Source: Heterodontus francisci
Taxonomy: Eukaryota
Reading direction: 5' to 3'
Assembly: GCF_036365525.1 (NCBI RefSeq)
Contig: NC_090404.1
Span: 4,712,001-4,776,000, forward strand
Length of the DNA: 64,000 nucleotides
Part shown: positions 31,338 through 57,595 of the stretch, one piece after another
Numbering within the stretch: position 1 is the stretch's first letter
How the letters are laid out: each line of letters starts with the position of its first letter
The notes under the pieces: generated by a model
The model's database searches: none
Seen by the model: only the letters and a program-made list of their open reading frames with translations
Told to the model about the DNA's origin: nothing
Made by a program: the position numbers and the translations under genes

Positions 31338-31837
31338 TACTGCGGGGCTCATGGCGCAGAAATGCAAGGTGATGTTGGAGATCAGGGCATTGCCAATCGC
31401 TAGCTCAGTAATCTTGGCATCTTTTGTCAACATAGAAACAAACCAATTAATGATGTCGGTGTTCCTGTGTACATTCCCTCCATTACGATGAAGCATACAC
31501 TGTGCCGGCTGCCCAGGGTGCTGACTGCACCAGTACATATAAGTGTTAGAATCGTTTCTCTTTTCAAGCTGCACAGTCGTGTGATGTTACTTTTCTCTTC
31601 AATTGTCATTTCAAGGACAGTCTGTTCAATTGTGTCTTGGTGGTTCAATTATAAGAGAATATCATAGTAATAGTCATGATTAGAAGCATTATCATCACCA
31701 CCATCTCAATGAACATAATTATCATCATTTGACCAATAATGAAACCTAGGTTGCAGCAGGGAAAATGCATTTTTGCTTGAAAGGAAACATTACAGTAAAG
31801 TAATTTAATGATGATTAACAGTGTGAGCCTGTTCCAT
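31338..31837 (-). pseudogene. TCR alpha/delta-type V pseudogene (leader 31794-31837, V exon ~31345-31648), reverse orientation
   Basis: Joined frames read QDTIEQTVLEMTIEEKSNITRLCS/..SNTYMYWCSQHPGQPAQCML..WFVSMLTKDAKITELAIGNALISNITLHFCAMSP; degenerate heptamer CGCAGTA at 31338-31344; frameshifted leader MEQ/LTLLIIIKLLY|GTAATG. Confidence 0.75.
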
Positions 31838-32284
31838 ATGATGCTTTCTGAGTCTGTAACTCTGCAGTCTGGAAAATCCGCTGTCTGAGCGAACGCATTT
31901 CCTAACCCACTGACCTTCTAACTCAGCCAGTGCCAAACAGGGAACAGTGACAGCAATCTCTCCATAAACACAGGGGAAGCAAGGCGGCTCAGAGCCAAAG
32001 CAACTGAAGTTTTGCGGGCGGGGCTGCCGCGGGGGCAGTGTTGACACACGGAGGATTCATTTGTAAGGAACTGAATTCATTCATAATGTCTCAATCTGAA
32101 ATTGTATAACTCTACCTGTCTCGAAGAGTTGTTTTACTTGCGAAATTATTGCACATTCGCTACAAGCAGGCTTGCGATATGAAAGACAGAATTATTATAT
32201 TATTTACAAGTTACCGAAATCTTCATCAGTGAAGTGGGTTAAAACTCGGGTGGGAATGTAACGGTGGGAAATGGAATGAAATGT

Positions 32285-32838
32285 TAATAAAAGCAAAATA
32301 CTGCAGATGTTGGAAATCTAATCGGACAAGGTCACAGAAAATAACTGAGCAGCAGGTCATGGACCAAAGGCAGCGGTATGTTACTGGTGTGGTCACATAC
32401 AAGCGTTACTGCAGAGAGGGTGCAAATTGACAGAAAAAGAACAGCCCTGACCCCAAGCACAAGCATGGAAAAAACTGTGAGTAGGCACAATAGAAACAAA
32501 CGAAGCAAATTAAAGTAAAATAAAAGAAACAAATAACAAAGAAAAAAGAAAAAATAACTAAGAATAAAAATTAAAAGGTGGGTCCGTCATGCACTGAAAT
32601 TTTGAACTCATTGTTCAGTCCGGCAGGCTGTCGTGTGCCGAATCGGTAAATGAGATGCTGTTCCTCGAGCTTGCGTTGTCGTTCACTGGATCACTGCAGC
32701 AATCCCAGGACAGAGATGTGGGCATGAGAACAGGGGGTGTATTGAAATGGACAGCAACCGGAAACTCGGGGTCGTGCTTTCGGACTGAGTGGAGGTGTTC
32801 CGCAAAGCGGTCACCCAAACTGCGTTTAGTCTCCTCGA
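32285..32838 (-). mobile_element. Penelope-like element fragment (GIY-YIG end plus terminal repeat)
   Basis: ORF 32615-32818 LGDRFAEHLHSVRKHDPEFPVAVHFN. Confidence 0.8.
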
Positions 32839-32988
32839 CATTGGGGACGGAAGTGACTGTTCAGAGTGGTAGAAATGGACGGGAGAAGAAATTCCAGCCG
32901 GTCGAATAACAACACGGCGCTGTTTCTTCCTTTCCAGTTCTGTAAGGTCGCAGTCTCTATTTCTGAAGTTCAGACTGGAACCGCAGAG

Positions 32989-33462
32989 ATAAAACTCTGC
33001 CTGACACCACTTATTGTCCTGATCACAGGTCGGTACCATTAGAAACTCCCTGCAACATTCGCCAATCATCATTAAATTTCCCATCTCCAGCTGTGGGTCA
33101 CTTTCACTTTATTGTACTTCATCTAACATGCTGTGTGTCCGCTGTTTATTTTCAGAGATGGGTAACAGAGACTCAGGGCTCCAGTAAGAACAAGGAGTTG
33201 GATCAGTAAATTTAGCAATAATCTATAGTTGTTCTGCATTGTTTCACTTGCCAGCTGTAACCTGTTCTGGTATCACCAGTATCCACACCGAGCTCCTTAG
33301 TATCTGTTCAGAACCGATAGTCACGGCAAGAAGGAAACGGCTCCCGGTTTTGAACACTTCAGCGGTAATCTCAACCGGATGCAAGGCACTTTTCTCCTGC
33401 CTATGAAAGGCTTGAGGATCACAGACAACGACTATTATTACTGCACCATAAGACCCACAGTG
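32989..33462 (+). pseudogene. TCR alpha/delta-type V pseudogene (leader 32989-33028 with ATG>ATA, V exon 33156-33455, perfect heptamer, nonamer lost)
   Basis: (M)KLCLTPLIVLITG|GT; CNLFWYHQYPHRAP*YLFRT...LRITDNDYYYCTIRP followed by CACAGTG at 33456-33462. Confidence 0.82.
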
Positions 33463-34339
33463 AATAAGATTCCTCGAGCAGAACACAGGTCGGCATTAAG
33501 GGTGGGCGCCAAGAAAATACATGGGATTGAATCCCAGAGAGTTTGCACAGAAAATGAAGGGAATATGCACTTTTTCCGAGCTGTTTTCTCAGTCAGTGCT
33601 CTCACCGTTGTGAAAGGTAACATTTTTGTAGCATTTGAATCTAGGGTCAAATTCAGATATTCCCAGCTACCTGTTAACAATGACTTGCAGATCTCTGGGA
33701 TGAATAACAGGATCGATCTGTCCAAGTAACATATCCGTCAGGCCACATCTTGCAAAGTTTCTGGAATTGCATTGGTAACAAAAGTGGCTGAATGAAATCA
33801 TCACTTTACTGGTACAAGTTGAACATAAGTGATACCGCACAACGATTTGAAGAGGAGTGGCTACTTATAATGTCCCTGATAGCCTTAGGACTGTAGCAAT
33901 GATGTTCATGGTCGGGAGGGTATTCATTCATACCAGGGCTTGAGAGCAAATCGAATGATTTCACCTTAATTAGAGAGAGATCTATTTCTCATATAACATA
34001 AAGATATCCAGTTAGACAACAATGGAGACAATGTGAGAAAGAAGCAGAAAGACTGCCAACGAGATAAACAACAAGTGACTGAGACAGGGAGAAAGACGCA
34101 CAAACGTATTCAGGGAAGAAAGTATTGGTGAGACAAAGCAGTAATTAGTACTCAACGAACCTGATTGGTTCACAGCTAACATAATATCTGAGCCACCAGC
34201 CAACGTAACCCAGAGAAACACCCGTCCGTTTTCCAATAAGTGAATTCTGCCTCGATCAAAGGTCATTCTTCAATATCGGATTGGAAAATTAACAATTAAA
34301 GCATTCTGCTATTTTCAGTCGAACGCTAAACCAGACAGC

Positions 34340-34806
34340 ATGTGCTTCCTACGTTTCTTACTGATGATACTGGTCTTGTTGTCCGGTGAACCTATGTTTA
34401 AATGATCAGTGTGTCCTCCATTGGTTATATTCAGTCTTTTGATTTTGACTTCTGTGTATTGTTACAGGAATGAGTGGTGACGATTCAGTGTCCCTGGACC
34501 CACTTGAATTAACGGTTCAGGAAAGACGGGTGGTAATTCTGAACTTTAGTTACACGACAGCGTAGCCTGACTTAAATCTCTTCTGGTACATGCAGTATCT
34601 GAGGGAAGCTCCGAGATTTTACTGAGAACATGCGGCATGATAAAGGGGGATAAATCTCCAGATTTTCCGGATTCTGGTGAATTGGATAAAGACAAGAAAA
34701 CAGTTCCTTCAAAGGTCGACGGGGCTCTTGTCTCTGACTCTGCGGTGCGTTACTGTGTCCTCCGCCCCACACTGTCAGAGGAGCGCAGTAAGTCAGTACA
34801 AACATG
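34340..34806 (+). pseudogene. TCR alpha/delta-type V pseudogene (leader 34340-34385, V exon 34468-34767, 23-RSS)
   Basis: MCFLRFLLMILVLLSG|GT..AG|GMSGDDSVSLDPLELTVQERRVVILNFSYTTA*PDLNLFWYMQYLREAPRF/../SGELDKDKKTVPSKVDGALVSDSAVRYCVLRP; CACACTG 34768-34774, 23 nt, ACAAACATG 34798-34806. Confidence 0.88.
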
Positions 34807-36106
34807 GCAAAGGACTCTCACCTCCTCTCACTGAATCTGGATTGTTATCTGATAATGGAACACAAACCAAACTATGGAGGGAAACACATGGGTCAATTTA
34901 TAGATGGGTAGTTCATTAAACAGTTAGAAAGATAAATGGACAGTCTCCCCGCCTTCACTTTCTCATTCAATGATCACTTCCTCCTTTGTTTTGAAAGTAT
35001 CCAGCTGCTGCAGACAAACGCCTGTGAATTCCGGCTGTGGAGTCTGTGAGTATAAAGCTCAGTGTGTTTCACAGCTCAGTAAGGGGTTGGTTCTTGTTCG
35101 TTTGGGAGCTGAATGATGAGATAGTTGGACATTAGCACTTCAGTCATCACTCCGATTGCCCGACTGCAACATAACCAAGAGGTGGATCGGATCATGAAGA
35201 ATATAAAACAGTTAACTCTGGATATAACTTTAAATTAAACTGCGGAATTATAGCTTAGGGACACGGGTTCAAACTATGAAAGGTCATTTCAGGACCGGTA
35301 TCAGGAAATTCTTCAGCAATCAATGCGTGGAATCAAGTTCCAGATGCAACAGAAGATGGTCAAACCTGGGAATAATTTCATTAAATGATGGATATTCCAA
35401 TGGCGAAGATAGGAGCAGGATGGGGTTGGAGGCATGTTGGTGTTAGACAGTCTATCCTAAGAGTGGCAGAATTCCAACTCCCGCCCTGCATGATCCTGTG
35501 ATCTTGTGATCAATCGCAGGAGTCGGCAATTTCTTTTGGACATGCAGTCGCTTGTAGTCACCAGCAGAGGGCACTAAATGTCTTCACTGTGTTGGTGTCA
35601 ATGTGGAAGCGACTGCAGCTTCAGTATTGAGTAACTTTACTGAAGAAGCGGATTGAAGAAAAGTTTCGGTAACAGAACCATTCATTTCAAATGGAAGTTG
35701 TTTTTATCAATGTCATGATGAAGGAATAAAATATTATTACTAATGGCGATATTCTGCATTTTTTAACAAGCAGATCACCACAGAATCACTCAGTCCATTT
35801 GTTGCGACACTCCGCCACTCTCCTCAAAGCTGTTAATTATTCCCTATTGCATTCAAGTAAAAGGCGCTGGCTGTCTCGTTTATCTGCAGAACAACTGCAA
35901 ACTTGTTATGCTGGCTGTGGAAATTCTAATGAGCAGTACACAGCTCTTCTCGTGGAATTCAATGGCACAGATGCCAGGACAACATGAATTATTTTCCTCA
36001 TGCACCAGCCTCACAGACTGGCTCTGTTAAAGGGCCAACATTGAGTTTTAACCCCGTCCAGTTCCCTGTTGTGAGAGCAATTTCATTGGACTCCATGTTC
36101 ACTGCT

Positions 36107-36260
36107 CTGATGTCATCAATTCTGGATGAAAGGACCGAAGAGCTGATTGGATGAATTGCAATACTAATGCGCTGAGTGCTGATTGGATGAACTGGAGAAT
36201 AAAGGATTTGTGATCTGATTGGACGAATTAAACAACAAAGGACCCGTGAGTTGACTGGAT
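36107..36260 (+). promoter_or_regulatory. V promoter: CRE-like TGATGTCA plus inverted CCAAT boxes on a 36-bp period
   Basis: CTGATGTC 36107; CTGATTGG at 36143, 36179 and 36215; TTGACTGG 36251; lies immediately upstream of a V leader. Confidence 0.55.
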
Positions 36261-36336
36261 GTCACCTGCTGTCCATGCCAGCAATGGACCTATTGGGAGA
36301 AAGGCTGGATATCGAACAGCATCTTCTAAAGGCCTG

Positions 36337-37249
36337 ATGAAAACAATTCCAGCTTCAATCAGTTCAGTTCATATCAGCCCACAACTGTCTGAAAACATCT
36401 TGGATGTTACTTTATATTTATTCCTCACAGCTGCAGCTCTCTCAACTGGTAAGTTCACAATTTACACAAGGCCGTCTTTCACATCTTGATCATATAGTTC
36501 ATCGGTCTGTTCCCTGAAGACAAGGGTAACAATCGATTGATCAGAAGTGAACAAAGCAATCCGGATCTACCTTGAGTCTGAACACTGTTTGAGCAAACTC
36601 GACAAGCTCCCCCAATAAGAGAAATTTGAAGAGTTGAGCTGAGATTACAGGGGAATGGCTGACAGACATGTTCCTCCCCACCAGGGCTAATGACAGACAC
36701 CGATACACACACGAGTCTTACACCCACAGGTCGTTTGTCGGCTTCCCTTTACAGTCGATCCCAGCACCTTCCTGTTGCAGCTTCTGAACTGTGGAAAGTG
36801 TATTTGTGTTTACCTGTCCTGATTTCTCAGTTAAGTATTGGGGCTAACGGGCTGATTCTGGGAGATAGACGTTGGTTAATTTAATATTGCTCTGTTCTTG
36901 CAGGACATTGTCGAGGAGACTCCATTTCACAGTAACCAGCTGTAATCATAGTAAGTGAAGGAGACGATGTTCGGTTGCACTGTGATTATACAGCTACAAG
37001 CAGCAGCAATCCTTACCTATTCTGGTACCGTCAGTATGCCAGTGGATACATGGAATATCTGCTGCAAAGAAACAAATACAGTGAGGACCGAGAAAGATTT
37101 CCAGAGGACCGTTTTTCAGCGGAGCTCGATGATTCGATCCGAACCGTCCCGCTGAAAGAATCTAAAACAGAACTGACAGACTCTGCGGTGTACTACTGTG
37201 CACTGAGACCCACAGAGACACAGAGCTGGGCTGATCCTGTACAAAAACT
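36337..37249 (+). pseudogene. TCR alpha/delta-type V, nearly intact (leader ending 36448, V exon 36904-37210, one in-frame TAA at 36933-36935, 23-RSS)
   Basis: ..LYLFLTAAALSTG|GTAAG; GHCRGDSISQ*PAVIIVSEGDDVRLHCDYTATSSSNPYLFWYRQYASGYMEYLLQR..DRFSAELDDSIRTVPLKESKTELTDSAVYYCALRP; CACAGAG 37211-37217, 23 nt, ACAAAAACT 37241-37249. Confidence 0.92.
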
Positions 37250-37544
37250 ATCAGAGAGTTGCTCAACATAACAGCAAGTTAGGGAAACATTGTGATTGGA
37301 GGCGAGTGTCTGCATTAGTGATTAGAACTTGTACTGTTAATGTTAATATACAGTTATTCTTATTCCTGCAATGTTTCACTTTTCAAATAATGATCTAATT
37401 TCCTTTTAAAAGTAACGATTGAATCTACCTCCACCAACATTTTCAGACAGTGTATTATGGAGCATAACATCTCGCTGAATAAAGGCAAAATTCTCTTCCT
37501 TTTTCCTCTGTTTCTTTTAGCAAGTATCTATGTGTTTTTGTAGA

Positions 37545-38850
37545 TCAGCAACACCGGACAGCCCGCTTCTACCTCCTTCCGAAAATTCACAAACAAGACT
37601 GTCCTGGCAGACCCATCGTTTCAGCCTGTTCCTGCCCCACTGAACTTATTTCTTTCTATCTTGACTCTATCTTTTCTCAACTGGTCCAGTCTCTTCCCAC
37701 CTGCATCCGTGACTCTTCTGAAGCCCTACATCGTTTATGACAATTTCCAGTTTCCTGGCCCAAACCGCCTCCTCTTCACGATGGACGTCCAATGTTTCTA
37801 CACCTCCATCCCCCACCAGGAAGGTCTGCGGGCTCACCCCTTCTTCCTTGAACAGAGTTCTTCATTATGCCTGCCTTTTTGTGGGATATGTCGAACATTC
37901 CTTGTTGTAGTCCAACTAAGGCCCCCTGACCCAACTCGTTTTCCGGTATATTGATGATTGTATCGCTGCCGTTTCCTGCACCCGCCCCGAACTGGAAATC
38001 TTTATCAACTTTGCTTCTAATTTCCACCCTTCTCTCTCCTTTACATGGTCCATCTCCGACACATCCCTTCCCTTCCTTGACGTCATTGTCTCCATCTCTC
38101 GGGATAGGCTGTCTAATATAAGCCCACAGACTCCCATAACTACCTCGACTACACTTCTTCACACCCGACCTCCTGTAAGTACTTTATTCCATTATCCCAG
38201 TTTCTCGGTCTCCAGCGCATCAGTTCTGATGATGCAACCTTCGGCAACAGCGCTTCTGACCCGCAACAGGGTTCCCCTTGTCCTCACTTTCCACCTCACC
38301 AGCCTCCATATCCAAAGGATCATCCTCCACCATTTCTGCCACGTCCAGCGTGATGCCAATACCAAACGCAGCTTCCCCTCCCCTCCCATGTCAGCATTCC
38401 GAAGGGATCATTCCCTCCGCGACACCCTCGTCCACTCCTCCATTACCCCCAAAGGCCGTCCCATTCCTATGGCTCCTTCCCATGCAATCACTGGAGGTGG
38501 AATACCTGCCCCTTTACCTCCTCTCTCCTCACTATCCAAGGCCCGAAACACTCCGTTCAGGAGAAGCAGCGATTTACTTGTACTTCCTTCAATGCAGTAT
38601 ACGGTATTCGCTGCTCGCAATGCAGTCACCTCTGCACTAGGGAGACCAAAGGCAGTTTGGGTGACTGCTTTCGGGAACACCTCTGCTCAGTCTAAAAACA
38701 TGCCCCGAGCTTCTTGTCGCTTGTCATTTCAATACCCGCACCCGCTCCCACCCATACAAAGTCCCGCCCCCTCCCTTCCTCCACCCACCCCCCACCCCTC
38801 CCCCCAACTCTGCTCTCTTGCCGAATTCTCTGTCCTGGACTTGCAGCAGT
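37545..38850 (+). mobile_element. Penelope-like element (degraded RT plus GIY-YIG); its terminal repeat resumes at ~40660-41035 after CR1 insertions
   Basis: LFTMDVQCFYTSIPH, FRYIDD, RVPLVLTFH, GIRCSQC..GDCFREH. Confidence 0.82.
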
Positions 38851-38859
38851 GTTACGTGT

Positions 38860-40660
38860 GCTGTGGATAGAGTGGAACCAGTGGATGGAGCTTACTTAGG
38901 TTTCCAGAAGGCATTTGATAAGGTGCCACATCAAAGGTTATTGCAGAAAATAAAAGCTCATGGTGTAGGGGGTAACATATTGACATGGACAGAAGATTGG
39001 TTAGCTAACAGCAACAGAGAGTATGCATAAATAGGTCAGTTTCTGAATGGCAAGATGTAACGAGTGGTGTGTCACAGGGATCTGTGCTGGGGCCTCAACT
39101 TTTTACAATTTATATAAATGACTTAGATGAAGGGACCGAAGGTATGGTTGATAAACTTGCTGATGACACAAAAATGGCTGGAAAGTAACTTGCGAAGAGG
39201 ACATAAAAATGCGACAAAGGGATGAAGATAGGTTAAGTGAGTGGGCAAAGATCTGGAAAAGTGAGTATAATGTGGGAAAGTGTGAGATTGTCCTCTTTGG
39301 CAGGAAGAATAAAAAAGAAGCATGTTATCTAAATGGTGAGAGATTTCCGAGCTGTGAGATGCAGAGGGATCTGGGTGCCCTAGTGCATGAATCGCAAAAG
39401 GTTAGTATGCAGATACAGCACATAATTAGGAAAGCTAATAGAATGTTATCGTTTAATTGAATACAAAAGTAAGCAGGTTATGCTTCAGCTATAAAGGACG
39501 TTGGCGTGACCACATCTGGATTACTGTGTACAGTACTGGTTCCTCATTTAAGGAAGGATGTAAATACGTTGGAGGCAGTAGAGAGATGGTTTCCGAGACA
39601 AATACCATGAATGGATGGGCTTTCTTACCAGGAAAGGTCCTGGGGAAAATTGATATACTGAGAGATTTGGGTGTTCAGGTCTATTGTTCCCTGAAGGAGG
39701 CAACGCAGGTCAATAGAGTGGTCAAGAAGGCATACGGCATGCTTTCCTTCATCGGACGGGGTATTGAGTACAAGAGTTGGCAGGTCATGTTACAGTTGGA
39801 TAAGAGTTTGGTTCTGCCACATTTGGAATACTGCGTGCAGTTCTGGTCGCCACATTACCAAAAGGATGTAGATGCTTTGGAGAGGGTGCAGAGGAGGTTC
39901 ACCAGGATGTTGCCTGGTATGGAGGGCGCTAGCTATGAAGAGAGGTTGAGTAGATTGGGATTATTTTCATTAGAAAGACGGAGGTTGAGGGAGGACCTGA
40001 TTGAGGTGTACAAAATCATGAGAGGTATAGACAGGGTGGATAGCAAGAAGCTTTTTCCCAGAGTGGGGGATTCAATTACTTGGGGTCGCGAGTTCAAAGT
40101 GAGAGGGGAAAAGTTTAGGGGGGATATGCGTGGAAAGTTCTTTACGCAGAGGGTGGTGGGTGCCTGGAACGGGTTGCCAGCGGAGGTGGTAGACGCGGGC
40201 ACAATAGCATCTTTTAAGATGTATCTAGACAGATACATGAATGGGCAGGAAGCAAAGAGATACAGACCCTTAGAAAATAGGCGACATGTTTAGATAGAGG
40301 ATCTGGATCGGCGCAGGCTTGGAGGGCCGAAGGGCCTGTTCCCATGCTGTAATTTTCTTTGTTCTTTGTTCTTTGAAAGATAGGATAAGGTCGGCTTGCA
40401 TCCGCTGGAATTTAGAGGAGTAAGAGGCGACTTGATTGAAACAGATAATATCTTGAGGGGGCTTGACAGGGTGGATGTGGAAAGGATGCTTCCCCTAGTG
40501 GGAGAATCTCGAACTGTCACTGTTTAAAATTAAGGTGTCGCCCATTTAAGACCGAGATGAGGAGAATTTTTTTCTCTCAGAGGGTCGGCAGTCTTTGGAT
40601 TCCTCTTCCTCAAAAGGCAGTGGAAGCAGAGTCTTTGAATATTATTAAGGTACAGTTAGA
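38860..40660 (+). mobile_element. CR1 fragment with a nested younger CR1 3' fragment (~39640-40375)
   Basis: ORFs 38818-39030, 39209-39460 and 39457-40293 (chimeric across the nest junction). Confidence 0.85.
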
Positions 40661-41226: not shown

Positions 41227-41571
41227 AGAGCGGCCTTGAAGGCATCACTCATCAACCAAAAGAAGATGTGACAGCTCGGGGAGGAGTGATCTGCACCATG
41301 ACCAGCTCCTATACTGAGGTGACGAGAGTTTGCCTGGACTGGTACCGGGATGGTCTCTCCGTGGATCCGGAGAAATTCTCATCCGCTGCACCGATGGGTT
41401 CATTGACAATTCGTCTTTTGCAAGCCGGCGCTTCACCACATCTTTGGTCAAAAAATACACGGCCGTCAGTGAAACAGTTTCACAGGTGACAGCTGCCGAT
41501 ACCAGGAAATACTTCTGAGTCTTAACACCGCACACAGCCGTGTAGGTTGGGAAAGAGCCGATACATAAACT
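41227..41571 (+). pseudogene. TCR alpha/delta-type V pseudogene, no leader visible, 23-RSS
   Basis: AG|ESGLEGITHQPKEDVTARGGVICTMTSSYTEVTRVCLDWYR/..EILIRCTDGFIDNSSFASRRFTTSLVKKYTAVSETVSQVTAADTRKYF*VLT; CACAGCC 41533-41539, 23 nt, ACATAAACT 41563-41571. Confidence 0.8.
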
Positions 41572-43283: not shown

Positions 43284-43289
43284 GTTTCC

Positions 43290-45829: not shown

Positions 45830-48800
45830 ACTTGATTAAAATTCATTGAAACCCTAATTAACTAATTAATTAATAAATAGAGGAGCAACTACACCGAAGG
45901 GAGGAGATTACAGCATTTAATATTTATAGTAGAAATCTAGCGCTAGGGACCATATAGTTAATTGTAACTTTATTTAGTAAGGATTTAATAAGTATTTCTT
46001 TTAAATTAATTTATTAATTAGTGCTAGAAATGTCTGTTAGAGGTGTAAAGTGCTTCATTGTGAGATGTGGGAGGTCCGTGACACTTCCAGCATTGCGGAC
46101 AACGTCATCTGCAAGAAGTGTACCCAATTGCAGCTCGTCACAGACCGCATGGATCGGTTGGAGCAGCAATTGGATGCGATTAGGAGCATGCAAGTGGTGG
46201 ATAGCATCATAGACAGGAGTTTTAGAGACGTGGGTACACCCAAGGTGCATGCAGATGGATGGGTGACCGCTAGAAGGGGCAGGCAGTTAGTGCAGGAATC
46301 CCCTGTGGCTGTCCACCTCTCTAACAAGTATACCGTTTTGGATACTGTTGGGAGGGATGGCCTATCAGGGGAAAACAACAGCAGCAGCCACAGCAGTGGC
46401 ACCACGGCTGGGACTGTTGTTCAACAGGGAGTGACAAAGCGCAGAAGAGCATTAATTCTTGGGTACTCTATAGTCAGGGGCACGGATAGGCACTTCTGAG
46501 GACGTGAACGAGACTCTCGGATCGTATACTGCCTTCCTGGTGCCAGGGTCAAGGATGTCTCTGAACGGGCAGGGGGCATTCTGAAGGGGAGGGTGAACAG
46601 CCAGAGTTTGTGGTACACATTGGTACCAACGACATAGGCAGGAAGAATGACGGGGTTCTGCAGCAGGAATTCCGGGAGTTAGGTAGTAAGTTAAAAAACA
46701 GGACCTCTAGGGTTGTAATCTCGGGATTACTCCCTGTGCCACGTGCCAATGAGACTGGAAATAAGAAGATAGTGCAGCTGAACACGTGGCTAAACAGCTG
46801 GTGGAGGAGGGAGGGTTTCAGATATCTGGATCATTGGGGTCTCTTCCGGGGCAGGTGGGACCTGTACAAGAAGGATGGGTTGCATCTAAACTGGAGGGGC
46901 ACAAATGTCCTGGCCCCGACTTTTGTTAGCGTCACTCGGGAGGGTTTAAACTCGTGTGGCAGGGGGGTGGGAACAAGAGCAGTTGGTCAGCAGGTGAAAC
47001 AACTGAGGGGGAACTAGTAAATAAGGCCAGTAAGACTGAGAGGAAGAGCAGGCAGGGAGATGTTGCTGAGCACTGCGGGACTGGTGGTCTGAAGTGCATT
47101 TGTTTCAATGCGAGAAGTATAACAGGTAAGGCAGATGAAATTAAAGCTTGGATTAGTACTTGATGTTGTTGCTATTACAGAGATTTGGTTGAGGGAAGGG
47201 CAGGATTGGCAGCTAAATGTTCCAGGATTTAGAAGCTTCAGGCGGGATAGAGGGGGGTGTAAAAGGGGTGGGGGAATTGCATTACTGGTTAAGGAGAATA
47301 TCACAGCTGTACTGCGGGAGGACACCTAAGAAATACCTCGGCAGCGAGGCAATATGTAGAGCTCAGGAATAGGACGGGTGCAGTCACAATGTTGGGAGTT
47401 TACTACAGGCCTCCCAACAGCCAGCGGGAGAGAGAGAAACATATATGTAGATAGATTTTGGAAAGATGTAAAAGCAACAGGTTTGTTGTGGTCGGTAATT
47501 TAAACTTCCCCTGTATTGACTGGGACTCAATTAGTGCTAGGGGCTTGGATGGGGCAGAATTTGGAAGGAGCATCCAGGGGGGCTTCTTGAAACAATGTGT
47601 AGATTGTCCAACTAGGGAAGGGGCCGTACTGTACCTGGTATTGGGGAATGAGCCCAGCCAGGTGGTCGATGTTTCTGTAAGGGAGCATTTCCGGAACGGT
47701 AGCCATAATTCCGTAAGTTTTAAGGTACTTGTGGATGAGGATAAGAGTAGTCCTCCGGTGAAGGTGCTAAATTGGAGGAAGGCTAATTATAACAATATTA
47801 GGCAGGAACTGAAGAATTTAGATTGGGGGCGGCTGTTTGAGGGTCAATCAACATCTGACATGTGGGAGTCTTTCAAACGTCAGTTGATTAGAATCCAGGA
47901 CCGGCATGTTCCTGTGAGGATGAAAGATAAGATAGGCAAGTTTCGGGTACCTTGGATAACGAGGGATATTGTGAGCCTAGTGAAAAAGTAAAAGGAAGCA
48001 TTCGTAAGGGCGAGAAGGCTGGGAACATACGAAGCCCTTGAGGAATATAACGAAAGTAGAAAGCAACTTAAGCAAGGAATCAGGAGGGTTAAAAGCGGTC
48101 ATGAAAAGTCTTTGACAAACAGGATTAAGGAGAATCCCAAGGCTTTATATACGTATATAAAGAACAAGAGGGTAGCCAGGGTAAGGGTTGGTCCACTCAA
48201 GGACAGAGGAGGAAACCTATGCATGGAGTCTCAGGAAGTGTGCGAGGTACTAAATGAGTACTTTGTATCAGTATTCACCCAAGAGAAGGACTTGGTGGAT
48301 GATGAGTCCGGGGAAGGGAGTGTAGATAGTCTGGGTCATGTCGATATCAAAAAGGAGGTGTCTTGAAAAACATTAAGATAGAGATGTCCCCAGGGCCTGA
48401 TGGGATCTACCCCAGAATACTGAGGGAGGCAAGGGAGGAAATTTCTGGAGCCTTGACAGAAATCTTTGTATTCTCATTGGCTACAGGTGAGATCCCAGAG
48501 GACAGGAAAATAGCCAATGTTGTTCCTTTGTTTTAGAAGGGTGGTAAGGATAATCCAGGAAATTAGAGGCCGGTGAGCCTTACGTCAACGGTAGGGAAAT
48601 TATAAGAGAGGATTCTTCGGGACAGAATTTATTCCCATTTGGAAACAAATGGACTTATTAGCGAGAGGCAGCATGGCTTTGTGAAAGAGAGGTCGTGTCT
48701 CACTAACTTGATCGTGTTGTTTGAGGAAGTGACGAAGATGATTGATGAAGGAAGGGCAGTGGAAGTTGTCTACATGGACTTCAGTAAAGCCTTTGACAAG

Positions 48801-49890
48801 GTCCTTCATGGAAGATTGCTACAAAAGGTGAAGTTACACGGGATCAGAGGTGAGCTGGCAAGATGGATGCAGAACTGGCTCGGTCATAGAAGACAGAGTG
48901 AAGCAGTGGAAGGGTGCTTTTCTGAATGGAGGACTGTGACTAATGGTGTTTTACAGGGATCAGTGCTGGGACCTTTGCTGTTTGCAGTATATGTAAATGA
49001 TTTGGAGGGAAATGTAGCAGGTCTGATTAGTAAGTTTGCGGACGACGCAAAGGTTGGTGGAGTTGAGGATAGTGATGAGGATTGTCAGAGGATACAGCAG
49101 GATATTGATTGGTTGGAGACATAGGCAGAGAAATGGCAGTTGGAGTTTAATCTGGACAAATGTGAGGTAATGCATTTTGGAAGGTCTAATACAAGTGGGA
49201 AGTATACAGCAATGGCAGAACCCTTAGGAGTATTGACAGGCAGAGCGATCTGGGCGTACAGGTCCAAAGATCACTGAAAGTGGCAACGCAGGTGGATAAG
49301 GTAGTCAAGAAGGCATATGGCATGCTTGCCTTCATCGGTTGGGGCATAGAGTATAAAAATTGGCAAGTTATGCTGCAGCTGTACAGACCCTCAGTTAGGC
49401 CACACTTGGAATATTGCATTCAATTCTGGTCGCCATACCACCAGAAGCATGTGGAGGCTTTGGAGAGGCTACAGAAGCGGTTTGCCAGGATGTTGCCTGG
49501 TCAGGAGGGTATTAGCTACCAGGAGAGGTTGGATAAACTCGAATTGTTTTCAACGGAACGACGGAGGTGGAGGGGTGACATGATAGAGGTTTACAAAGTT
49601 ATGAATTGCATGGACAGAGTGCTTAGTCGGAAGGTTTTTCCCAGGGTGGAAAAGACAGTTACTAGACGACATAGGGTTAAGGTGCGAGGGGCAAAGTTTA
49701 AAGGGGATGTGCGAGGCAAGTTCTTTACACAGAGGGTGGTGAGTGCCTGGAACCTGCTGCCGGGGGAGGTGGTGGAAGCAGGTACGATAGTCGCGTTTAA
49801 GAGGCATCTTGACAAATGCACGAATAGGATGGGAATAGAGGGATACGGTCCCCGGATGTGCAGAAGGTTTTAGTTTAGACAGGCATTGTT
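45830..49890 (+). mobile_element. Near full-length CR1 LINE: ORF1 (CxxC zinc finger, coiled coil, SGNH esterase) and frameshifted ORF2 (APE-RT)
   Basis: ORFs 46050-46499, 46610-47017 (HIGTND, DGLHLN), 47458-47991, 48639-49124 (FADD) and 49280-49873. Confidence 0.92.
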
Positions 49891-51120: not shown

Positions 51121-51129
51121 TTACTTAAC
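51121..51129 (-). CDS. IGHM: IgM TM2 exon (VK-stop); poly(A) signals at 50895-50900 and 50697-50702
   Basis: TTTTGCAG|GTT AAG TAA. Confidence 0.9.
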   Translation of the reverse strand, partial: VK

Positions 51130-51261
51130 CTGCAAAAGAGGGATAAATGAATGAAGCAGAGATTTCGTGGTCTTGGACATTCATCTCAGAACTATGAAAT
51201 TTTAGAGATTTGTTAAACAGCTTCATTTAATTTGAAATGTGAGTGGATTGAATATTCTCAC

Positions 51262-51389
51262 CTTCACCAGAGTGACGGCAGCGCTGTAGAAAATGCTCAG
51301 GAAGAACAGGATGATGAATGTGGAAGCGGTTGTCCAGATGTTGCCGCTCTCTTCCTCATTGTCTTCAATCCAGATGTGGCCTGAGTAAT
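51262..51389 (-). CDS. IGHM: IgM TM1 exon
   Basis: [43 protein letters not shown]|GTGAG (CART motif); splices from the internal Cmu4 donor after 54256. Confidence 0.95.
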
Positions 51390-51899
51390 CTTCGGGTTTT
51401 TAGAGGAGAAATATATTTAGATCGTTCATTAATCCAGGATATAAGATTGTCAATTTGCACTCGCAGAGTTCTTCCTTAAGCCATTATTTTGCTCTCTAAT
51501 TTAATTTTCAATTTGTATCGATTGTGAGGTTAATCACTCTTAGCAATCTACCTCTGTTACTAACCCCACAGCCATTCTTCCCATATGATCCTCGTCCAGG
51601 CCCTGTTGGAAAATATGATATTTCTTTCTTCAGGGTCAGGCGCTATTCTAGTCTGGATCAATCTTGTTCTATCATTCGGGATATCGATGGAATTTTACTG
51701 ATCAATATCGATAGTTTTGAGATTTTCATTGGTGCTGGGAAAGAGATTGGATGCGAGTTCTAATCTTGTTTATTTGTGATGGAAGTTGTTGGGCAATCAT
51801 TAATTGACCTAACTTTCTAAGCGAAAACTTTGCTTCACTGTGTTTGTAGGTCCAACATATACGAGGGAATATGTTGGAGAAGGTGCCCATTCAAACAGT

Positions 51900-52880
51900 G
51901 CATTTGAATGCTACTTTCACATATCGCCTGGTGCTTTTGTTTGTACGCTTTAATACATGTGTATGTGTGCATAAGTATCTGTTACTTTTCATCACTCAGT
52001 GCGTGTCCATGGCTTGTGTGTGTGAGATTTAATGTATGTTTTAATGCGTTTCTTTGTGCACCCGCCTGTGAATGTCTCAATGTGCGTATTTATATCTTGA
52101 TGCCCGTGTGTTGTGTCCCTGTATGTTAGTATGTGCTTATGTGCCAATGTGTATCAATGTGTGTTTTCAAGTGGCCGCGTGTGTGTGTATGTGCATGTGC
52201 GTGTGTATAAAATATATCATCCTTAATGTTTTGTCTTCATTCATCCATGTGTGTGCATGAGCATGATAATGTTTGTTTTTGTGTGTGGTTTGGTCCCCAT
52301 GCGTGCTTCATGTTGTGAGCATTTGTGTTGACAGATGTCTTTATGTTTTCCTGTGCGTCAATGTGTGTTTATGTTTCCATGTGTGCGTATGCGTTTGTTA
52401 ATGTTTGTTTTGTGTGCTTCTGTCCCCATAAGTGTGATAATGCGTCTGCTTTTGTGTTGATGTCTACGTTTATGCATTAATATGTGTGATTATGTGTACA
52501 TGTGTGCTAATGCGTGTGTTATGTGCATGTTTTTGCATCCATGTATGTGTCATAATGTTAATGTTGGTGTCTATTTGTGTGTGAGTGATCGTGTTAATGT
52601 GTCTGTTTAAATGTTTGAGTGCAGATGTGTTTGTCTGTTAATGTGCGAGTATGTTTCCATCTAGCTGTGTTTATGTCTATGATAATGAAAGCTTTTCCGT
52701 CTATGTTTCTGTGTTTGTGAGACTGTACTAATGTGTACATTTATGTTTATTTTTGCGTGGGTGACTGTGAAGTGTTTATATCTGCGTTTGAGTCTGTTTG
52801 TGTGTGTAGGTGTAAGTGTGTGGTTGTGCATTTGAGTGTGTTTATGTGTGTGTTTTTGTCTGTGTGCCTGCGCATCTTTA
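51900..52880 (+). repeat. ~1-kb degenerate (TG)-rich low-complexity tract in the Cmu4-TM1 intron
   Basis: Direct inspection. Confidence 0.8.
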
Positions 52881-53034
52881 TTCTTGTTCAAAGTTTTACA
52901 GAGAATAAATAACCGGGTCTGACCCTGACGGTGTGCATTATGGAGAATATTCTTCACTGTTCTGTGTATAAATGTATTCTGTGCGAGATGTCATCTGACA
53001 TCATCTGAATGACTGCAACAATGCAACTGATGGA

Positions 53035-53245
53035 TAAAAACAGAAGTTCTGGAAATACTCAGCAGGTCAGACAGCAGCTGTGGACAGAGAAGCAGAATTA
53101 ACGTTTCAGGTCGGTGCCCTTTTCACACACCTGAAATGTTAACTCTGCTTCTCTCTCCACAGATGCTGCCTGACCTGCTGAGTATTTAAGCATCTTCTGT
53201 TTTTATTTCAGATTTCCAATATCTGCAATATTTTGCTTTTATTTC
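53035..53245. mobile_element. Palindromic Penelope-derived non-autonomous element (~75-bp arms); related pieces at ~22905-23060 and ~28130-28240
   Basis: AAAACAGAAG.TCTGGAAATACTCAGCAGGTCAG...AACGTTTCAGG / CCTGAAATGTTAAC...CTGACCTGCTGAGTATTT...CTTCTGTTTT. Confidence 0.75.
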
Positions 53246-54193
53246 CATGAAACTGATGGGCCACAGAAACATCAGGAACAGGAGATGATTAAATCTTCAG
53301 CTAGATTTAGATGATTATGTTATTGGAATTTAACAGGGAAACCGTGAACGATATTACGTTACATAAATATATATTTTACAATGTGATTCCCATGTGGAAA
53401 GTTTAAAATCTTCGCACACTGCGCTCGAAGCCGACTTTGTACTGATGGCATTTGAGTCCATTTAATAGAGAGCAGGGGGAGTGGGAGTATAAGGTTTACA
53501 AATGTCCTTGCCCCTTTTTCTGTTGGAGGAAATGTGGCGAGGAGCTACAGTCAGTTCACAATTCTCTTTCCCGTCTGTCTGTTGCAGAAGTACCGTTGCA
53601 GTGGATTCACAAGTACCCTTTCCTCTTCTCTGTTTGGGAAGTGGGGTACAGTGTTTTAGTAAATTCCTCTTCCCCCTCTTTCTGTTGGGGGATTTTGGGA
53701 AGATTTCGTATTCGTGTGTGGCCATCACTTCAGTTCCCAGTGCGCATGATGCTGCAACTAAAAACTGACCCTATTCTGAAGGGATGGCCAACACGAGAAG
53801 CAGGTACACCGAGATCTAAATGCACTGCGTATTTTTGTTGGTAAGGAGAAATGTCCAGATTCCCCATCTCCTCCTCCCCGGCCCCCCACCCCTGTCCCCC
53901 TCTAATGCTCCCCACCGCCTCCCCCTCCTCCAACGGGAGGAAAGTTGCTGAAATACTTCCACAGAATCCAATAATGAATCAGGTTTACTCTGTGAATTAT
54001 TATGTGCTGGAAACACTGGTTGTACAAGACTTGGGCCCGAGACCTGCAAATATCATGCTTTGATGAAAAGACATACACTTAGCAAATGTGGGAAGCACAA
54101 TTAATTGAGCTGTTGTGTATTTAAATCGCGATTGGAAGAAAAGGTCTTTATAGTGTTTTTTTATTTAAGAATTGAAATGCAATCGAGAAATTC

Positions 54194-54588
54194 TCATTGA
54201 CATGAATTAACGGTGTCCAACAGTGCAAGGGAAATGTTCACAAAACTCGGTTTACCGCTGGATTTATTAACTGTTCTGTTGATGATCTTCAAGGGGATCG
54301 CTTCATGTCCCACCACACAGGAGTAAGAAGCGCCGCTGGCCCACTCCTTTGCTGCAATGGATAACAGGCTGTAGATGAAGAAGGAGCTCTTGTCGTTCTC
54401 CGCCATCACCTCGGTGTTCTTGTAGTTGCCGGGATTCACCGACTTGTCATTGACGGTCCACTTGACGAAGATCTCTCGGGGGGAGAAACCTCGCACTAAG
54501 CAGGTGAGGGAGAGGAACCTCTCTGCGGAGATTTCTTCTGCTGGGGGCAGGAGAACAGACACAGACGGTTCCCGCAGATCTTTCCATG
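54194..54588 (-). CDS. IGHM: IgM Cmu4 plus secretory tailpiece; poly(A) signal at 54160-54165
   Basis: AG|(A)[15 protein letters not shown]...[44 protein letters not shown]; penultimate Cys; internal G|GTAAA donor at 54256/54255. Confidence 0.97.
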
Positions 54589-55058
54589 CTGAAAAATTAA
54601 AATAAATGTCAATAAACTAGACAATTTCAGAGACAATGACACCAGTGGTTAAATGTGAGAGAAATTGTGAAGGTTTTCCTTTTCGTCTCTGGGGCCTGTG
54701 CTGTTTTCCAGCCGGTGCAGAGGTGCTGCAATCCTGCTCGCTGAGAACATAAAGGATTAGACTGGAAAATTACATAGAACTTGCAGCACAGGAGCAGGCC
54801 ATTAGGACGAGCTAGCCTATGCTGGTGTTTATGCTGCACACGGACCTCCTCCCACCTTACTTCAGCTCTTTCTATTCCTTTCTCCATAATCTACGTATCT
54901 AGCATCACTTAAAATGCATCACCTCTGGTCCCAGGGAGGTTCATTAGTGAATTACAATTAAATTATCAGCGTAATCCATTCAACCACTTAATTGGGCCTT
55001 GCACAAACACCGGCAAGAAGCACAACATCTGATTTATTGCTTCAATCACATTGCTCAC

Positions 55059-55364
55059 CTTCCTTGTGGATGGCATCTCTGAGAGGAGTCGGCAGATCCT
55101 GATGGCTCACCACACAGTAGAACACAGCCTCACTCAGCCAGGCTTGTGTCGAGATGTCTACAGTGCTGATCACGCTGTCGGGATCCTCTCCGGGTTGGAC
55201 GGCAATCTCTGATTTCAAAGGCTTCTGTTCTTGTGTCCAGGACACGTTGACACCATAAGGAGCATTAGACACGACGCAGGTTAAGGTGACCGTCGCCTCC
55301 AGTAAGACCTGTTCTATTGATGGTGGCAGTAGTTTAATTACTGGATGATTGCACTCGGAAGAAT
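55059..55364 (-). CDS. IGHM: IgM Cmu3 exon (306 nt)
   Basis: [30 protein letters not shown]...[21 protein letters not shown]; AG/GT phase-1 boundaries. Confidence 0.97.
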
Positions 55365-56768
55365 CTGTAGAACAGAAATGAGAGTCAAAGAAATCTCCAT
55401 CTTCAGGATCAGGACGCGAGTATTTAACTATCACTTTTTTCAGGAGGGGAAAAACACCTTTCGCTTCAACACTGTCGTTCATGGGAAGGGCAACGATTTG
55501 TAAAATCTGGGACATCCAAGCGGATCACATCTCTGCTGAATATAATGGCTCTGTCACCCTAGGACATGAGCTACACATGTAATTCATACTGGCTCAAAAC
55601 GAATGAAATTACGAATTTTAGGACCAACTGGAAACAAAGTTAATGTTCTGGTGCCTTGTCAGTATATTTGGGGAGATGAAAATGTTCAGCAACCAGTCAG
55701 AGGAGGGGCGAAAGGTCGGTAAAATGCAGTCCCAAGGTTTTTGTTTTTGTGTGGTGAGGAATAATTCGCAATACCGGATGAGATAGTTTTCTAATATCTG
55801 CCACGAGTGAGTATTTCTCATGTGTCGGCCTGGAGTTAGAAGGCGATCTGACCACAGGACTGTAATAAGAGCATAAGAATAAGATTAGGCCATTCAGCCC
55901 CTCGAGCACGTTCCGCCATTCAATTACACGATGGCTGAATTGTATCTTAATTCTGTTTACCCATGTATAACCCTTAATACCCTTACCTGTCAGAAATCTA
56001 TCACTCGCAACATTAAAGTTTTCAATGGATGTCAAGCTTCTAAAGTGAGTTGGGGGAGAGAATTCCAGATTACCGCTATCTACTGTGTGAATACTCCCTT
56101 CCTGATATCATTCCTGAATGACCATGGTCTAATCTGAAGGTTATGCCCCCTTGTTCTGAAGTTCCTCACCCGAGGAAATATTTTTCTCCATTGACTCCAT
56201 CAATTCCAGTAAACATCTTAACCACCTCAATTAGATCACCCTTTAATCTTCTGTCCTCAAAGCAATACCAGTTTGGCCTGTGAAACCTGTCCTCTTAACT
56301 TAACCCGATCAGCCCCGTTATCATTATGGTCAATTCTTGTTGCACCACTCCCAAGGCCAATACATTCTTCCTGTGCTCTGCAGTCCAGAATTGAACACAG
56401 TTTTCTAAATAGGGTAGATGCTCTTTCTGGCACCTGATTCCGAGGCCGTTACCAAGAAAGGGTTCCAGATGCCGATTGCTGCTCCGTGTATGATTAACCC
56501 ATTCAGGATAAAGCTGATATACAGGCCACCTCACTCACTATATAACATCACAGGAGAGCTAAACATTCTTTCATGATGTGATGACATGTTGAACCGTGAG
56601 CAATCCTAATTTCTAATTTCTAAATCCTAAACTCACAGCCAAATAACACATAAAAACTGCACGATGGCGATTTAGAAATTGTTCTTTGTACTAACTCCAA
56701 TAAATTCCTGACTTTCAGTAACATGGAGTACAGAAAGGTGTGGAGCTTCCTGGGACTGTGCATCTTAC

Positions 56769-57086
56769 CTGGCGATCCGGTGATGTTTCGGCTTTGGGTG
56801 GCCGCTTGATGGGAGACCTGGCAGGTATAGACCGTGTTGGTGAACCATTCCCGAGCGGGGACTGTCAGCCGACTGGTCGCTGAGAAATTCCCGTTCGTTT
56901 CACAGGCGGGAGAGGTGACGAAGCCCGATTCCATGGGATGTCCATCCTTCAACCAACTCACGGTTATTGCTTCTGGATGGAAATCGATGATTGAACACAC
57001 GACAGTTGCAAATCTGCTGCTTGTGATTTCTTCACTGGAAGTCTGGGTGAGGATAACCGTTGGATGGACGATGTCACCTTTACAAT
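56769..57086 (-). CDS. IGHM: IgM Cmu2 exon (318 nt)
   Basis: [15 protein letters not shown]...[20 protein letters not shown]...[20 protein letters not shown]; phase-1 boundaries. Confidence 0.97.
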
Positions 57087-57298
57087 CTTCAAGAAAAAAC
57101 ATGTTAGACATTTCTAGAAGAAGTTAATAACTGATACAAACTGTTCTGATATTTTAACAGGTTATTTGCATCAAGCAGGCACTAACTGATGTTTCCAGGG
57201 GTCTGCACTGTGCACAACACTCTAAATGTGGAATAGCCAATGTTCTACACAAGATCCTTCTAGCTTTTCTGTTTTTCCACAGTTTCCACAACACTAAC

Positions 57299-57595
57299 CT
57301 GGAATTTCCTTGATCCAGAGCGACTCGCCGCGTCGAACCTCGCAGTAGATTTTGCTGCTTCCCACCTCTGACTCGGTGATGGTTAATTGGCTGCTCAGGG
57401 TGTAGGTTCCCTTCTTGTTCAGCACTGACGGGTAAGTCTTCAAACCAGTGGTGATCGGTTCTTCACCTTTCTTCCAGGAAACGCTGGTGATTTGGGGGAT
57501 GTAGTCCATCGCCAAACAGCCGTAGGCCATGGAGCCATCGGTGTTGGGTTGTTCACAGGAGCACAGGCCGTAAAGAGTTGGGGGAGACGGTGTCG
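57299..57595 (-). CDS. IGHM: IgM Cmu1 exon (297 nt)
   Basis: [43 protein letters not shown]...[17 protein letters not shown]; phase-1 boundaries. Confidence 0.97.

What the first reader, a model, noticed from the sequence alone, without database searches (positions are those of the whole stretch)
31338..57595. Intact IgM constant-region gene directly adjacent to an array of TCR alpha/delta-type V segments
Seen: five V segments ending in the TCR-type YYCAL(R)P/CAMSP motif, three with full 23-RSS, lie ~10-20 kb from the IgM TM exons, with only transposons between. Known: shark IgH genes are V-D-D-J-C mini-clusters; IgH-V/TCRdelta chimeric rearrangements, TAILV segments and NAR-TCR are described in nurse shark; IgH-TCRalpha/delta linkage is reported in chondrichthyans. 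Inference: a whole, apparently functional IgM cluster is embedded in or abuts the TCR V array. That would make its VH a cis donor for Ig-TCRdelta chimeras and may preserve an ancestral joint Ig/TCR locus.
Basis: partly seen in the sequence, partly recalled or inferred. Interest (0 to 1): 0.85.

Follow-up and report, generated by a model that had tools for sequence, protein, structure and literature searches.

The report
Shark IgM gene beside dead TCR V genes
An undamaged horn-shark IgM constant-region gene lies 10-26 kb from five T-cell-receptor-type V gene segments, but all five are broken pseudogenes, and this mixing of antibody and T-cell-receptor genes was already published for other sharks in 2025.

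Summary
On the minus strand at 51.1-57.6 kb there is a structurally intact IgM constant gene: CH1-CH4, secretory tailpiece, TM1 and TM2, all with canonical splice sites. Five V-like segments lie 9.5-26 kb downstream of its last exon. Four of them face the IgM gene in convergent orientation.

V4 is clearly of the TCR alpha/delta V family, and V1-V3 match a profile of that family. V5 is a V relic of unresolved type. All five are pseudogenes, with stop codons, frameshifts, a lost Cys104 codon or a lost leader. Only two (V3, V4) keep a convincing heptamer-23-nonamer signal, not three. Everything between them and the IgM gene is LINE or other repeat debris.

The IgM V-D-D-J part is not in the window. 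There is no V, D or J in the 6.4 kb upstream of CH1, so "whole functional cluster" is untested.

The interpretation (IgH clusters interspersed with TCR alpha/delta-type V exons, an ancestral joint locus) is stated in Flajnik et al. 2025 (PMC12227049) for four other elasmobranchs. This scan noted the same pattern at many other places on this chromosome. This is a horn-shark instance of a known arrangement, and here the V segments are dead. Read evidence could not be obtained.

The parts
57299..57595 (-). IgM CH1 exon (297 nt, phase 1; carries the N-terminal Cys pair 'LCSC' and the intradomain Cys-Trp-Cys)
   Evidence: Sequence with AG acceptor and GT donor. Pfam C1-set, 2.9e-11.
56769..57086 (-). 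IgM CH2 exon
   Evidence: C1-set, 1.1e-20. A second in-frame acceptor 9 nt downstream is possible.
55059..55364 (-). IgM CH3 exon
   Evidence: C1-set, 1.7e-9. The CH2-CH3 intron (1.4 kb) holds a LINE 3' fragment.
54194..54588 (-). IgM CH4 exon with secretory tailpiece (one N-glycosylation site, penultimate Cys, stop), plus an internal G|GTAAAC donor for splicing to TM1. AATAAA at 54165-54160.
   Evidence: C1-set, 2.1e-21. Aligns over residues 4-129 with human Cmu4 plus tailpiece, E about 4e-47.
51262..51389 (-). IgM TM1 exon (acidic membrane-proximal stretch plus transmembrane helix)
   Evidence: AG acceptor, GT donor. Its frame fits the CH4 internal donor.
51121..51129 (-). IgM TM2 exon (Val-Lys-stop). 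AATAAA signals follow near 50.9 and 50.7 kb.
31338..31648 (-). V1: V-set pseudogene. It has a frameshift between FR1 and CDR1, stops in FR1, WC in place of WY, the ending FCAMSP, heptamer relic CGCAGTA and no nonamer. It has the same orientation as the IgM gene.
   Evidence: TCRa/d-V profile 6.8e-8. Generic V-set only 15.5 bits. PDB and atlas neighbours are mixed VL/Vbeta.
33156..33462 (+). V2: TCR alpha/delta-like V pseudogene. It has several stops and a frameshift, keeps the FR2 motif LFWYHQY, and ends YYCTIRP. The heptamer CACAGTG is perfect, but there is no nonamer at 22-24 nt.
   Evidence: tblastn against V4, 1.6e-5. Profile 6.3e-7.
34340..34806 (+). V3: TCR alpha/delta-like V pseudogene. 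The leader exon 34340-34385 has an ATG and a GT donor. The V exon 34468-34767 has two stops and one frameshift and ends RYCVLRP. Its 23-RSS is CACACTG/ACAAACATG (34768-34806).
   Evidence: tblastn against V4, 4e-7. Profile 1.5e-9.
36903..37249 (+). V4: the best-preserved TCR alpha/delta V. The V exon 36903-37210 has Cys23, Trp41 and Cys104 and ends YYCALR. Its single in-frame stop is a TAA at 36933-36935 in FR1. No ATG lies between 36693 and the V-exon acceptor at 36902; the nearest one (36690) opens a polar, non-signal-like reading. The expected leader donor reads TT. Its 23-RSS is CACAGAG/ACAAAAACT (37211-37249).
   Evidence: Pfam V-set, 5.2e-12. Among the hits, P0005 and P0007 are the two named TCR alpha(/delta). 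The best single-domain PDB hits are TCR alpha chains. In the profile search, every informative name is TCR alpha V.
41227..41569 (+). V5: V-like pseudogene of unresolved type. It has an AG acceptor, one frameshift after the FR2 motif WYRDG, and a TGA at the Cys104 codon (YF*VLTP). The heptamer is CACACAG and the nonamer is poor.
   Evidence: TCRa/d profile only 0.03. Weak VH-like FR3 hits, E 0.03-0.9. No Pfam hit.
46050..49873 (+). CR1-type LINE, frameshifted: an ORF1 with an esterase (GDSL) domain, an endonuclease-like ORF, RT and a C-terminal domain. It is the main filler between V5 and the IgM 3' end.
   Evidence: ORFs. Pfam RVT_1 2.7e-18 and Lipase_GDSL_2 1.1e-10. Repeated elsewhere in the window.
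39209..40293 (+). LINE 3' fragment (C-terminal domain of the same repeat family) between V4 and V5
   Evidence: the ORF resembles those at 49280-49873 and 14715-15365. Repeated in the window.

Best explanation
**What it is.** The window is a piece of the horn-shark chromosome region where IgM heavy-chain miniclusters are interspersed with V segments of the TCR alpha/delta locus. Flajnik et al. 2025 call this region the 'antigen receptor complex'.

**Shown.**
- A structurally intact Cmu gene lies on the minus strand, able to make secreted and membrane forms by the usual CH4-internal donor to TM1-TM2 splice.
- Five V-gene relics lie 9.5-20 kb (to their RSS ends; about 26 kb if counted from CH1) downstream of its last exon. 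Four of them are convergent with it.
- At least V2-V4, and probably V1, belong to the TCR alpha/delta V family.
- All five are disabled.

**Inferred.**
- The V relics are decayed members of the TCR alpha/delta V array, stranded between IgM clusters as the clusters multiplied in this region. They have no present function.
- The mutual divergence of the five V segments (different subfamilies, not recent copies of each other) fits an old array rather than a recent local duplication.
- The Cmu gene most likely belongs to an ordinary V-D-D-J-C cluster whose rearranging part lies just beyond the window end, and it works by rearrangement within the cluster.
- Any use of its VH on TCR delta would need long-range or trans rearrangement. 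This window does not address that.
For: - The Cmu exon anatomy, splice sites and open frames were read directly. Four C1-set domains. mu-type CH4 plus tailpiece. No second C relic in the window.
- The five V relics are the only strong matches (E up to 0.05) to a TCRa/d V profile anywhere in the six-frame window; the next is a 39-aa piece at 24.1 kb, E 0.1. V4's homologues are TCR alpha/delta V genes.
- V1-V3 score 8-35 bits higher on that profile than on generic Pfam V-set.
- Defects were read directly. The V segments are mutually divergent.
- All other ORFs of 80 aa or more that were tested are RT, LINE ORF1 or have no family. 55% of 37.3-50.7 kb is repeated within the window.
[quoted passage not shown] Horn-shark clusters are about 18-20 kb (PMC2191167).
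- Unchecked scan notes report the same pattern at more than 10 other places on this chromosome, and TCR constant genes about 3.7 Mb away.
Against: - No V, D or J of the IgM cluster is in the window, so the gene could be a headless orphan. A follow-up in this scan found such a case 5.7 Mb away.
- No labelled shark Valpha, Vdelta, TAILV, VH or VL references could be brought in, so no real phylogeny was made.
- The types of V1 and V5 are not settled.
- The 'stranded by cluster amplification' history is inference. Other clusters' flanks could not be compared.
Confidence: 0.8

Rival explanations
1. This is a working mixed Ig/TCR unit. The V segments are usable TCR alpha/delta V genes, and the adjacent IgM cluster's VH serves as a cis donor for Ig-TCR-delta chimeras.
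For: V3 and V4 keep heptamer-23-nonamer signals. V3 keeps a leader with an ATG and a donor. VH-to-TCR-delta rearrangement and TAILV are described in nurse shark, as cited in PMC12227049.
Against: Every V has at least one disabling lesion. V4 has a TAA in FR1 and no leader ATG. V3 has two stops and a frameshift. V2 has stops and a frameshift. V5 has a frameshift and Cys104 changed to TGA. V1 has a frameshift and a dead RSS. No VH, D, J or TCR C is in the window.
Confidence: 0.04
2. This is an orphan ('headless') Cmu gene. The constant gene is intact but has lost its V-D-D-J and is silent.
For: No V, D, J or J-type RSS lies in the 6.4 kb upstream of CH1. A follow-up elsewhere on this chromosome reported such an orphan (unchecked here).
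Against: From CH1 to the membrane poly(A) signals is only about 6.9 kb, and published clusters are 18-20 kb (PMC2191167). A normal V-D-D-J would therefore lie several kb beyond the window end. All six exons are free of lesions, which is less expected for a long-silent gene.
Confidence: 0.15
3. This is an assembly artefact: an IgM cluster contig wrongly joined to TCR V sequence across repeat-rich DNA.
For: The 37-51 kb bridge is mostly LINE and other repeats. Horn shark has very many near-identical IgM clusters (PMC2191167). No read spanning could be checked.
Against: There are no N runs in the window. The same juxtaposition is published for four other elasmobranch assemblies. First readers noted it at more than 10 other sites on this chromosome. 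DNA runs hold 0.59 of the sampled words of 31.3-37.3 kb, but they are probably from the assembly's own sample.
Confidence: 0.04
4. Some of the V relics (V5, perhaps V1) are not TCR alpha/delta V. They are Ig-like or Ig/TCR-intermediate V segments (TAILV-like, VL-like).
For: V5 barely matches the TCRa/d profile (0.03), and its only PDB hits are VH FR3 regions, E 0.03-0.9. V1's nearest PDB and atlas neighbours are V-kappa, V-lambda and V-beta. [quoted passage not shown]
Against: All these hits are weak and come from decayed fragments. V1 scores 29 bits on the TCRa/d profile against 15.5 on generic V-set. The exhaustive search with V5 gave only spurious repeat proteins.
Confidence: 0.3

Closest known systems
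Elasmobranch antigen receptor complex (AgRC): IgM/IgW/IgNAR clusters linked to TCR alpha/delta, with TCR-alpha/delta-type V exons between IgH clusters (Flajnik et al., Sci Adv 2025, PMC12227049)
   Same: An IgM minicluster constant gene lies within 10-26 kb of TCR alpha/delta-type V exons, the arrangement described in section 6 of that paper.
   Different: The species (horn shark) is not among the four analysed there. Here every V is a pseudogene, and most are convergent with the IgM gene. The paper's text as held gives no statement on the functionality or orientation of those V segments.
Horn shark (Heterodontus) IgM V-D-D-J-C minicluster (Litman laboratory; about 18-20 kb, PMC2191167)
   Same: Four Cmu exons, a secretory tail, two TM exons and a compact layout.
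   Different: Only the C part is in the window. V-D-D-J is not seen in the 6.4 kb upstream.
Vertebrate TCR alpha/delta V gene family with germline end YYCAL(R)P followed by a 23-RSS (for example teleost TRAV/DV genes; hits)
   Same: V4 shares 40-52% identity, the FR2 motif PYLFWYRQ, the ending DSAVYYCALRP and a 23-RSS. V2 and V3 share the FR2 and FR3 motifs.
   Different: The window's copies are broken: stops, frameshifts, a lost leader and decayed RSSs.
TAILV / Ig-TCR-delta chimeric V usage in nurse shark (as cited in PMC12227049)
   Same: Ig and TCR gene segments are in close linkage. V5 has a faint VH-like FR3.
   Different: No VH-like intact V, no TCR delta D, J or C, and no transcript evidence here. 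The resemblance of V5 is not significant.

Membership tests
IgM heavy-chain constant gene (Cmu) | Four C1-set Ig domain exons with conserved Cys-Trp-Cys, open frames and canonical phase-1 splice sites | tested here: met
   No stops.
IgM heavy-chain constant gene (Cmu) | mu-type secretory tailpiece (N-glycosylation site, penultimate Cys) contiguous with CH4 | tested here: met
   End-to-end alignment with human Cmu4 plus tailpiece.
IgM heavy-chain constant gene (Cmu) | TM1/TM2 exons reached from a donor inside CH4 | tested here: met
   G|GTAAAC lies inside CH4. TM1 is 51389-51262 and TM2 is 51129-51121, in frame.
Shark IgM minicluster (V-D-D-J-C) | VH, two D and JH with RSSs upstream of Cmu1 in the same orientation | tested here: inconclusive
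   None in 57.6-64.0 kb.
Shark IgM minicluster (V-D-D-J-C) | Expression as mu mRNA | not testable with these tools
The RNA-like runs hold next to none of the V-region words.
TCR alpha/delta V gene segment | V-set domain whose nearest named relatives are TCR alpha/delta V | tested here: met
   Met for V4. Supported through the profile for V1-V3. Not met for V5.
TCR alpha/delta V gene segment | 3' heptamer-23-nonamer recombination signal directly after the Cys104-x-x-x codons | tested here: met
   Met for V3 (6/7, 6/9) and V4 (6/7, 8/9). V2 has a heptamer only. V1 and V5 are decayed.
TCR alpha/delta V gene segment | Functional gene: leader exon with ATG, intact splice sites, open V exon, Cys23/Trp41/Cys104 | tested here: not met
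   All five have disabling lesions.
TCR alpha/delta V gene segment | Linkage to TCR D-delta/J-delta/C-delta/J-alpha/C-alpha on the same chromosome | not testable with these tools
   None in the window. Only unchecked scan notes place TCR constant genes about 3.7 Mb away.
[quoted passage not shown] | VH-like V sequence used with TCR delta | tested here: inconclusive
   V5 has only weak VH FR3 hits (E 0.03 or worse). No usage data.
Elasmobranch AgRC arrangement (PMC12227049) | TCR-alpha/delta-type V exons lying between or next to IgH miniclusters | tested here: met
   Cmu gene at 51.1-57.6 kb and V relics at 31.3-41.6 kb. Neighbouring clusters are known only from scan notes.

The most novel reading that the evidence does not exclude
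The recurring unit 'IgM cluster plus a few TCR alpha/delta-type V relics' along many megabases of this chromosome would mean that the horn shark's very large IgM cluster family grew by segmental duplications inside the TCR alpha/delta V region. Those duplications carried TCR V genes that then decayed. V5-type relics could be remnants of the Ig/TCR-intermediate V class. The flanks would then be a datable record of how the cluster organisation expanded.
Probability: 0.25. Interest if true: 0.4.

Novelty: new member of a known kind. Interest (0 to 1): 0.2.

Why it matters
It adds the horn shark, the species in which the Ig minicluster organisation was first worked out, to the sharks and rays whose IgH clusters sit among TCR alpha/delta V genes. 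At this site the TCR-type V segments are dead relics rather than usable segments. That limits how much such juxtapositions can be read as functional Ig/TCR sharing. It does not open a new question: the linkage and its evolutionary reading are already published.

Tried and rejected
No read evidence exists on the assembly, on V4's stop or on expression.
- **Exhaustive HMMER search** with the V5 piece gave only multi-repeat spurious proteins.
- **Atlas search** with V5 gave bacterial SpoIIE noise.
- **Word-based homologue search** with V1 found no candidate.
- **PDB searches** with the V3 piece found nothing, and with the V2 piece only weak mixed hits.
- **The listing of cluster members** added no informative names.
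- **Kokubu et al. 1987/88** papers, which give the horn-shark J-to-Cmu distance, are not held.
- **Labelled phylogeny** (shark Valpha, Vdelta, TAILV, NAR-TCR-supporting V, VH, VL) was not possible. No labelled references could be obtained without typing sequence.
- **Spliced IgM model** was searched exon by exon. The joined protein was not built or searched.
- **Considered and rejected:**
  - A fifth TCR-type V with an intact Cys (it is a TGA).
  - Further V or C relics elsewhere in the window.
  - Non-transposon genes between the V segments and IgM.

Full report
**Source and setting.** Earlier notes of this scan identify the genome as horn shark. The window has no N runs. Outside the two features discussed here it is transposon-rich.

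**IgM constant gene.** I read the minus strand from 57720 to 54100 and from 51560 to 50300. It shows six exons with canonical AG/GT borders and phase-1 junctions:
- CH1 57595-57299
- CH2 57086-56769
- CH3 55364-55059
- CH4 54588-54194
- TM1 51389-51262
- TM2 51129-51121 (Val-Lys-stop)

Other features of the gene:
- CH4 runs into a 20-residue tailpiece with one N-glycosylation site and a penultimate Cys. An AATAAA follows at 54165-54160.
- Inside CH4 there is a G|GTAAAC donor whose phase fits TM1.
- Each C exon is a Pfam C1-set domain, with E from 1.7e-9 to 2.1e-21, and has no stop.
- CH4 plus tail aligns over residues 4-129 with human Cmu4 plus tailpiece, E about 4e-47.

The gene is therefore a structurally intact Cmu gene. 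I searched the exons one at a time and did not build or search the joined protein.

**What is not there.** In the 6.4 kb upstream of CH1 (57.6-64.0 kb, minus strand) there is no J motif, no VH and no credible RSS. Horn-shark clusters are given as about 18-20 kb (PMC2191167 abstract). CH1 to the membrane poly(A) signals takes only about 6.9 kb here. A normal V-D-D-J would therefore lie beyond the window end. 'Whole, apparently functional cluster' is thus untested. An orphan C gene remains possible at about 15%, and a follow-up of this scan reported one such case elsewhere on the chromosome (unchecked by me).

**The V segments.** I used tblastn with the best V and a profile built from that V and its 12 homologues. 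Both find the same places and nothing else of note in all six frames of the 64 kb.

| V | Strand | Span | Lesions | RSS |
|---|---|---|---|---|
| V1 | - | 31648-31338 | FR1 with Cys23 is in another frame than the rest; stops in FR1; WY changed to WC | heptamer relic CGCAGTA, no nonamer |
| V2 | + | 33156-33462 | several stops, one frameshift | perfect CACAGTG, no nonamer |
| V3 | + | leader 34340-34385, V exon 34468-34767 | two stops, one frameshift; good leader with ATG and GT donor | CACACTG-23-ACAAACATG |
| V4 | + | 36903-37249 | one TAA at 36933-36935 in FR1; otherwise open with Cys23, Trp41 and Cys104; no ATG between 36693 and the acceptor at 36902; expected leader donor reads TT | CACAGAG-23-ACAAAAACT |
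| V5 | + | 41227-41569 | frameshift after the FR2 motif WYRDG; Cys104 codon is TGA | heptamer 5/7, nonamer 4/9 |

The lesions were read directly. All five are pseudogenes. Two keep a convincing 23-RSS, not three. The five are very different from each other, so they are members of different V subfamilies and not recent copies of one another.

**Type of the V segments.**
- V4 is a Pfam V-set domain, 5.2e-12.
- V4's database relatives share 40-52% identity, the FR2 motif PYLFWYRQ and the ending DSAVYYCALRP.
- The relatives with informative names are 'T-cell receptor alpha/delta variable' and 'T cell receptor alpha chain'.
- A profile search of 5.8 billion proteins returned 3525 hits. Among the best 120, every informative name is TCR alpha V.
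- In the PDB, the best chains that match V4 through a single V domain are TCR alpha chains.
- V3, V1 and V2 match the TCR alpha/delta profile at 1.5e-9, 6.8e-8 and 6.3e-7 (34.6, 29.2 and 26.1 bits). On generic Pfam V-set they score none, 15.5 and 17.8 bits. This favours the alpha/delta type.
- V1's nearest PDB and atlas neighbours are mixed V-kappa, V-lambda and V-beta.
- V5 matches the profile only at 0.03. Its only PDB hits are weak VH FR3 matches, and two further searches were uninformative. Its type is open.

I could not make a labelled phylogeny. No shark Valpha, Vdelta, TAILV, VH or VL references could be brought in through the tools.

**Between and around.**
- V2-V5 are on the plus strand and the IgM gene is on the minus strand, so they are tail to tail. 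V1 has the IgM orientation.
- From the TM2 stop it is 9.5 kb to V5's RSS relic and 13.9 kb to V4's RSS.
- The interval holds a frameshifted CR1-type LINE at 46.05-49.87 kb, with an esterase-domain ORF1 and RT.
- It also holds RT and LINE 3' fragments at 39.2-40.3 and 44.5-45.2 kb, and other repeats.
- 55% of 37.3-50.7 kb recurs elsewhere in the window.
- No non-transposon ORF with a family hit was found anywhere else in the window. There is no second C relic.

**Reads.** DNA runs from what is probably the assembly's own sample hold 0.59 of the sampled words of 31.3-37.3 kb. Runs guessed to be RNA hold 0.06, 0.02 and 0.00. I have no read evidence on the join, on V4's stop or on expression. I worked beside those places afterwards.

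**Comparison with what is known.** I found no paper doing this for horn shark. First readers of this scan noted the same IgM-next-to-TCR-V pattern at more than ten other places on this chromosome, from 0.56 Mb before to 8.6 Mb beyond this window. They also noted NAR-TCR and TCR constant genes about 3.7 Mb beyond it. These are unchecked leads.

**Verdict.** It is an intact Cmu gene next to five V pseudogenes, mostly of TCR alpha/delta type and mostly convergent with the IgM gene. The functional reading is not supported. The evolutionary reading is already in the literature. This is a horn-shark instance of a known arrangement and of low interest on its own. The one thing worth following up is chromosome-wide: whether IgM clusters spread as modules that carried TCR V genes with them.

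Noticed in passing
window 6014-10754 (-): An apparently intact L1-type LINE. ORF1 is 439 aa (ZCCHC3-like RNA-binding domain plus CCHC zinc knuckles). It is directly followed by an uninterrupted 1135-aa ORF2 (endonuclease, RT, zf-RVT). The element lies in a 55% GC island against a 40-45% background and may still be active.
   Followed up: partly
window 1019-1502 and 4107-4416: 27-bp minisatellite arrays (about 18 and 7 copies, 67-69% matches) flank an RT-bearing LINE fragment at 2.0-3.9 kb. The arrays give long spurious ORFs.
   Followed up: no
window 13262-13932: 34-bp tandem repeat, about 20 copies, 83% matches, purine-rich on one strand.
   Followed up: no
window 52000-53000 (IgM CH4-TM1 intron): CA-rich, microsatellite-like low-complexity DNA that yields a His/Thr-rich pseudo-ORF (52661-52957). 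It accounts for the skewed composition of the 3-kb CH4-TM1 intron.
   Followed up: no
window 46610-47017 (+): The CR1-type LINE between V5 and IgM carries a GDSL esterase domain in its ORF1 region (Pfam 1.1e-10), as known for CR1/L2-type elements.
   Followed up: partly
window 57080-57086 (-): CH2 has two in-frame AG acceptors 9 nt apart (…gaag|ATTGTAAAG|GTGAC…). Use of the second would drop three residues (Asp-Cys-Lys, including a Cys) from the CH1-CH2 junction.
   Followed up: no
I did not examine them or send them to any search afterwards.
   Followed up: no
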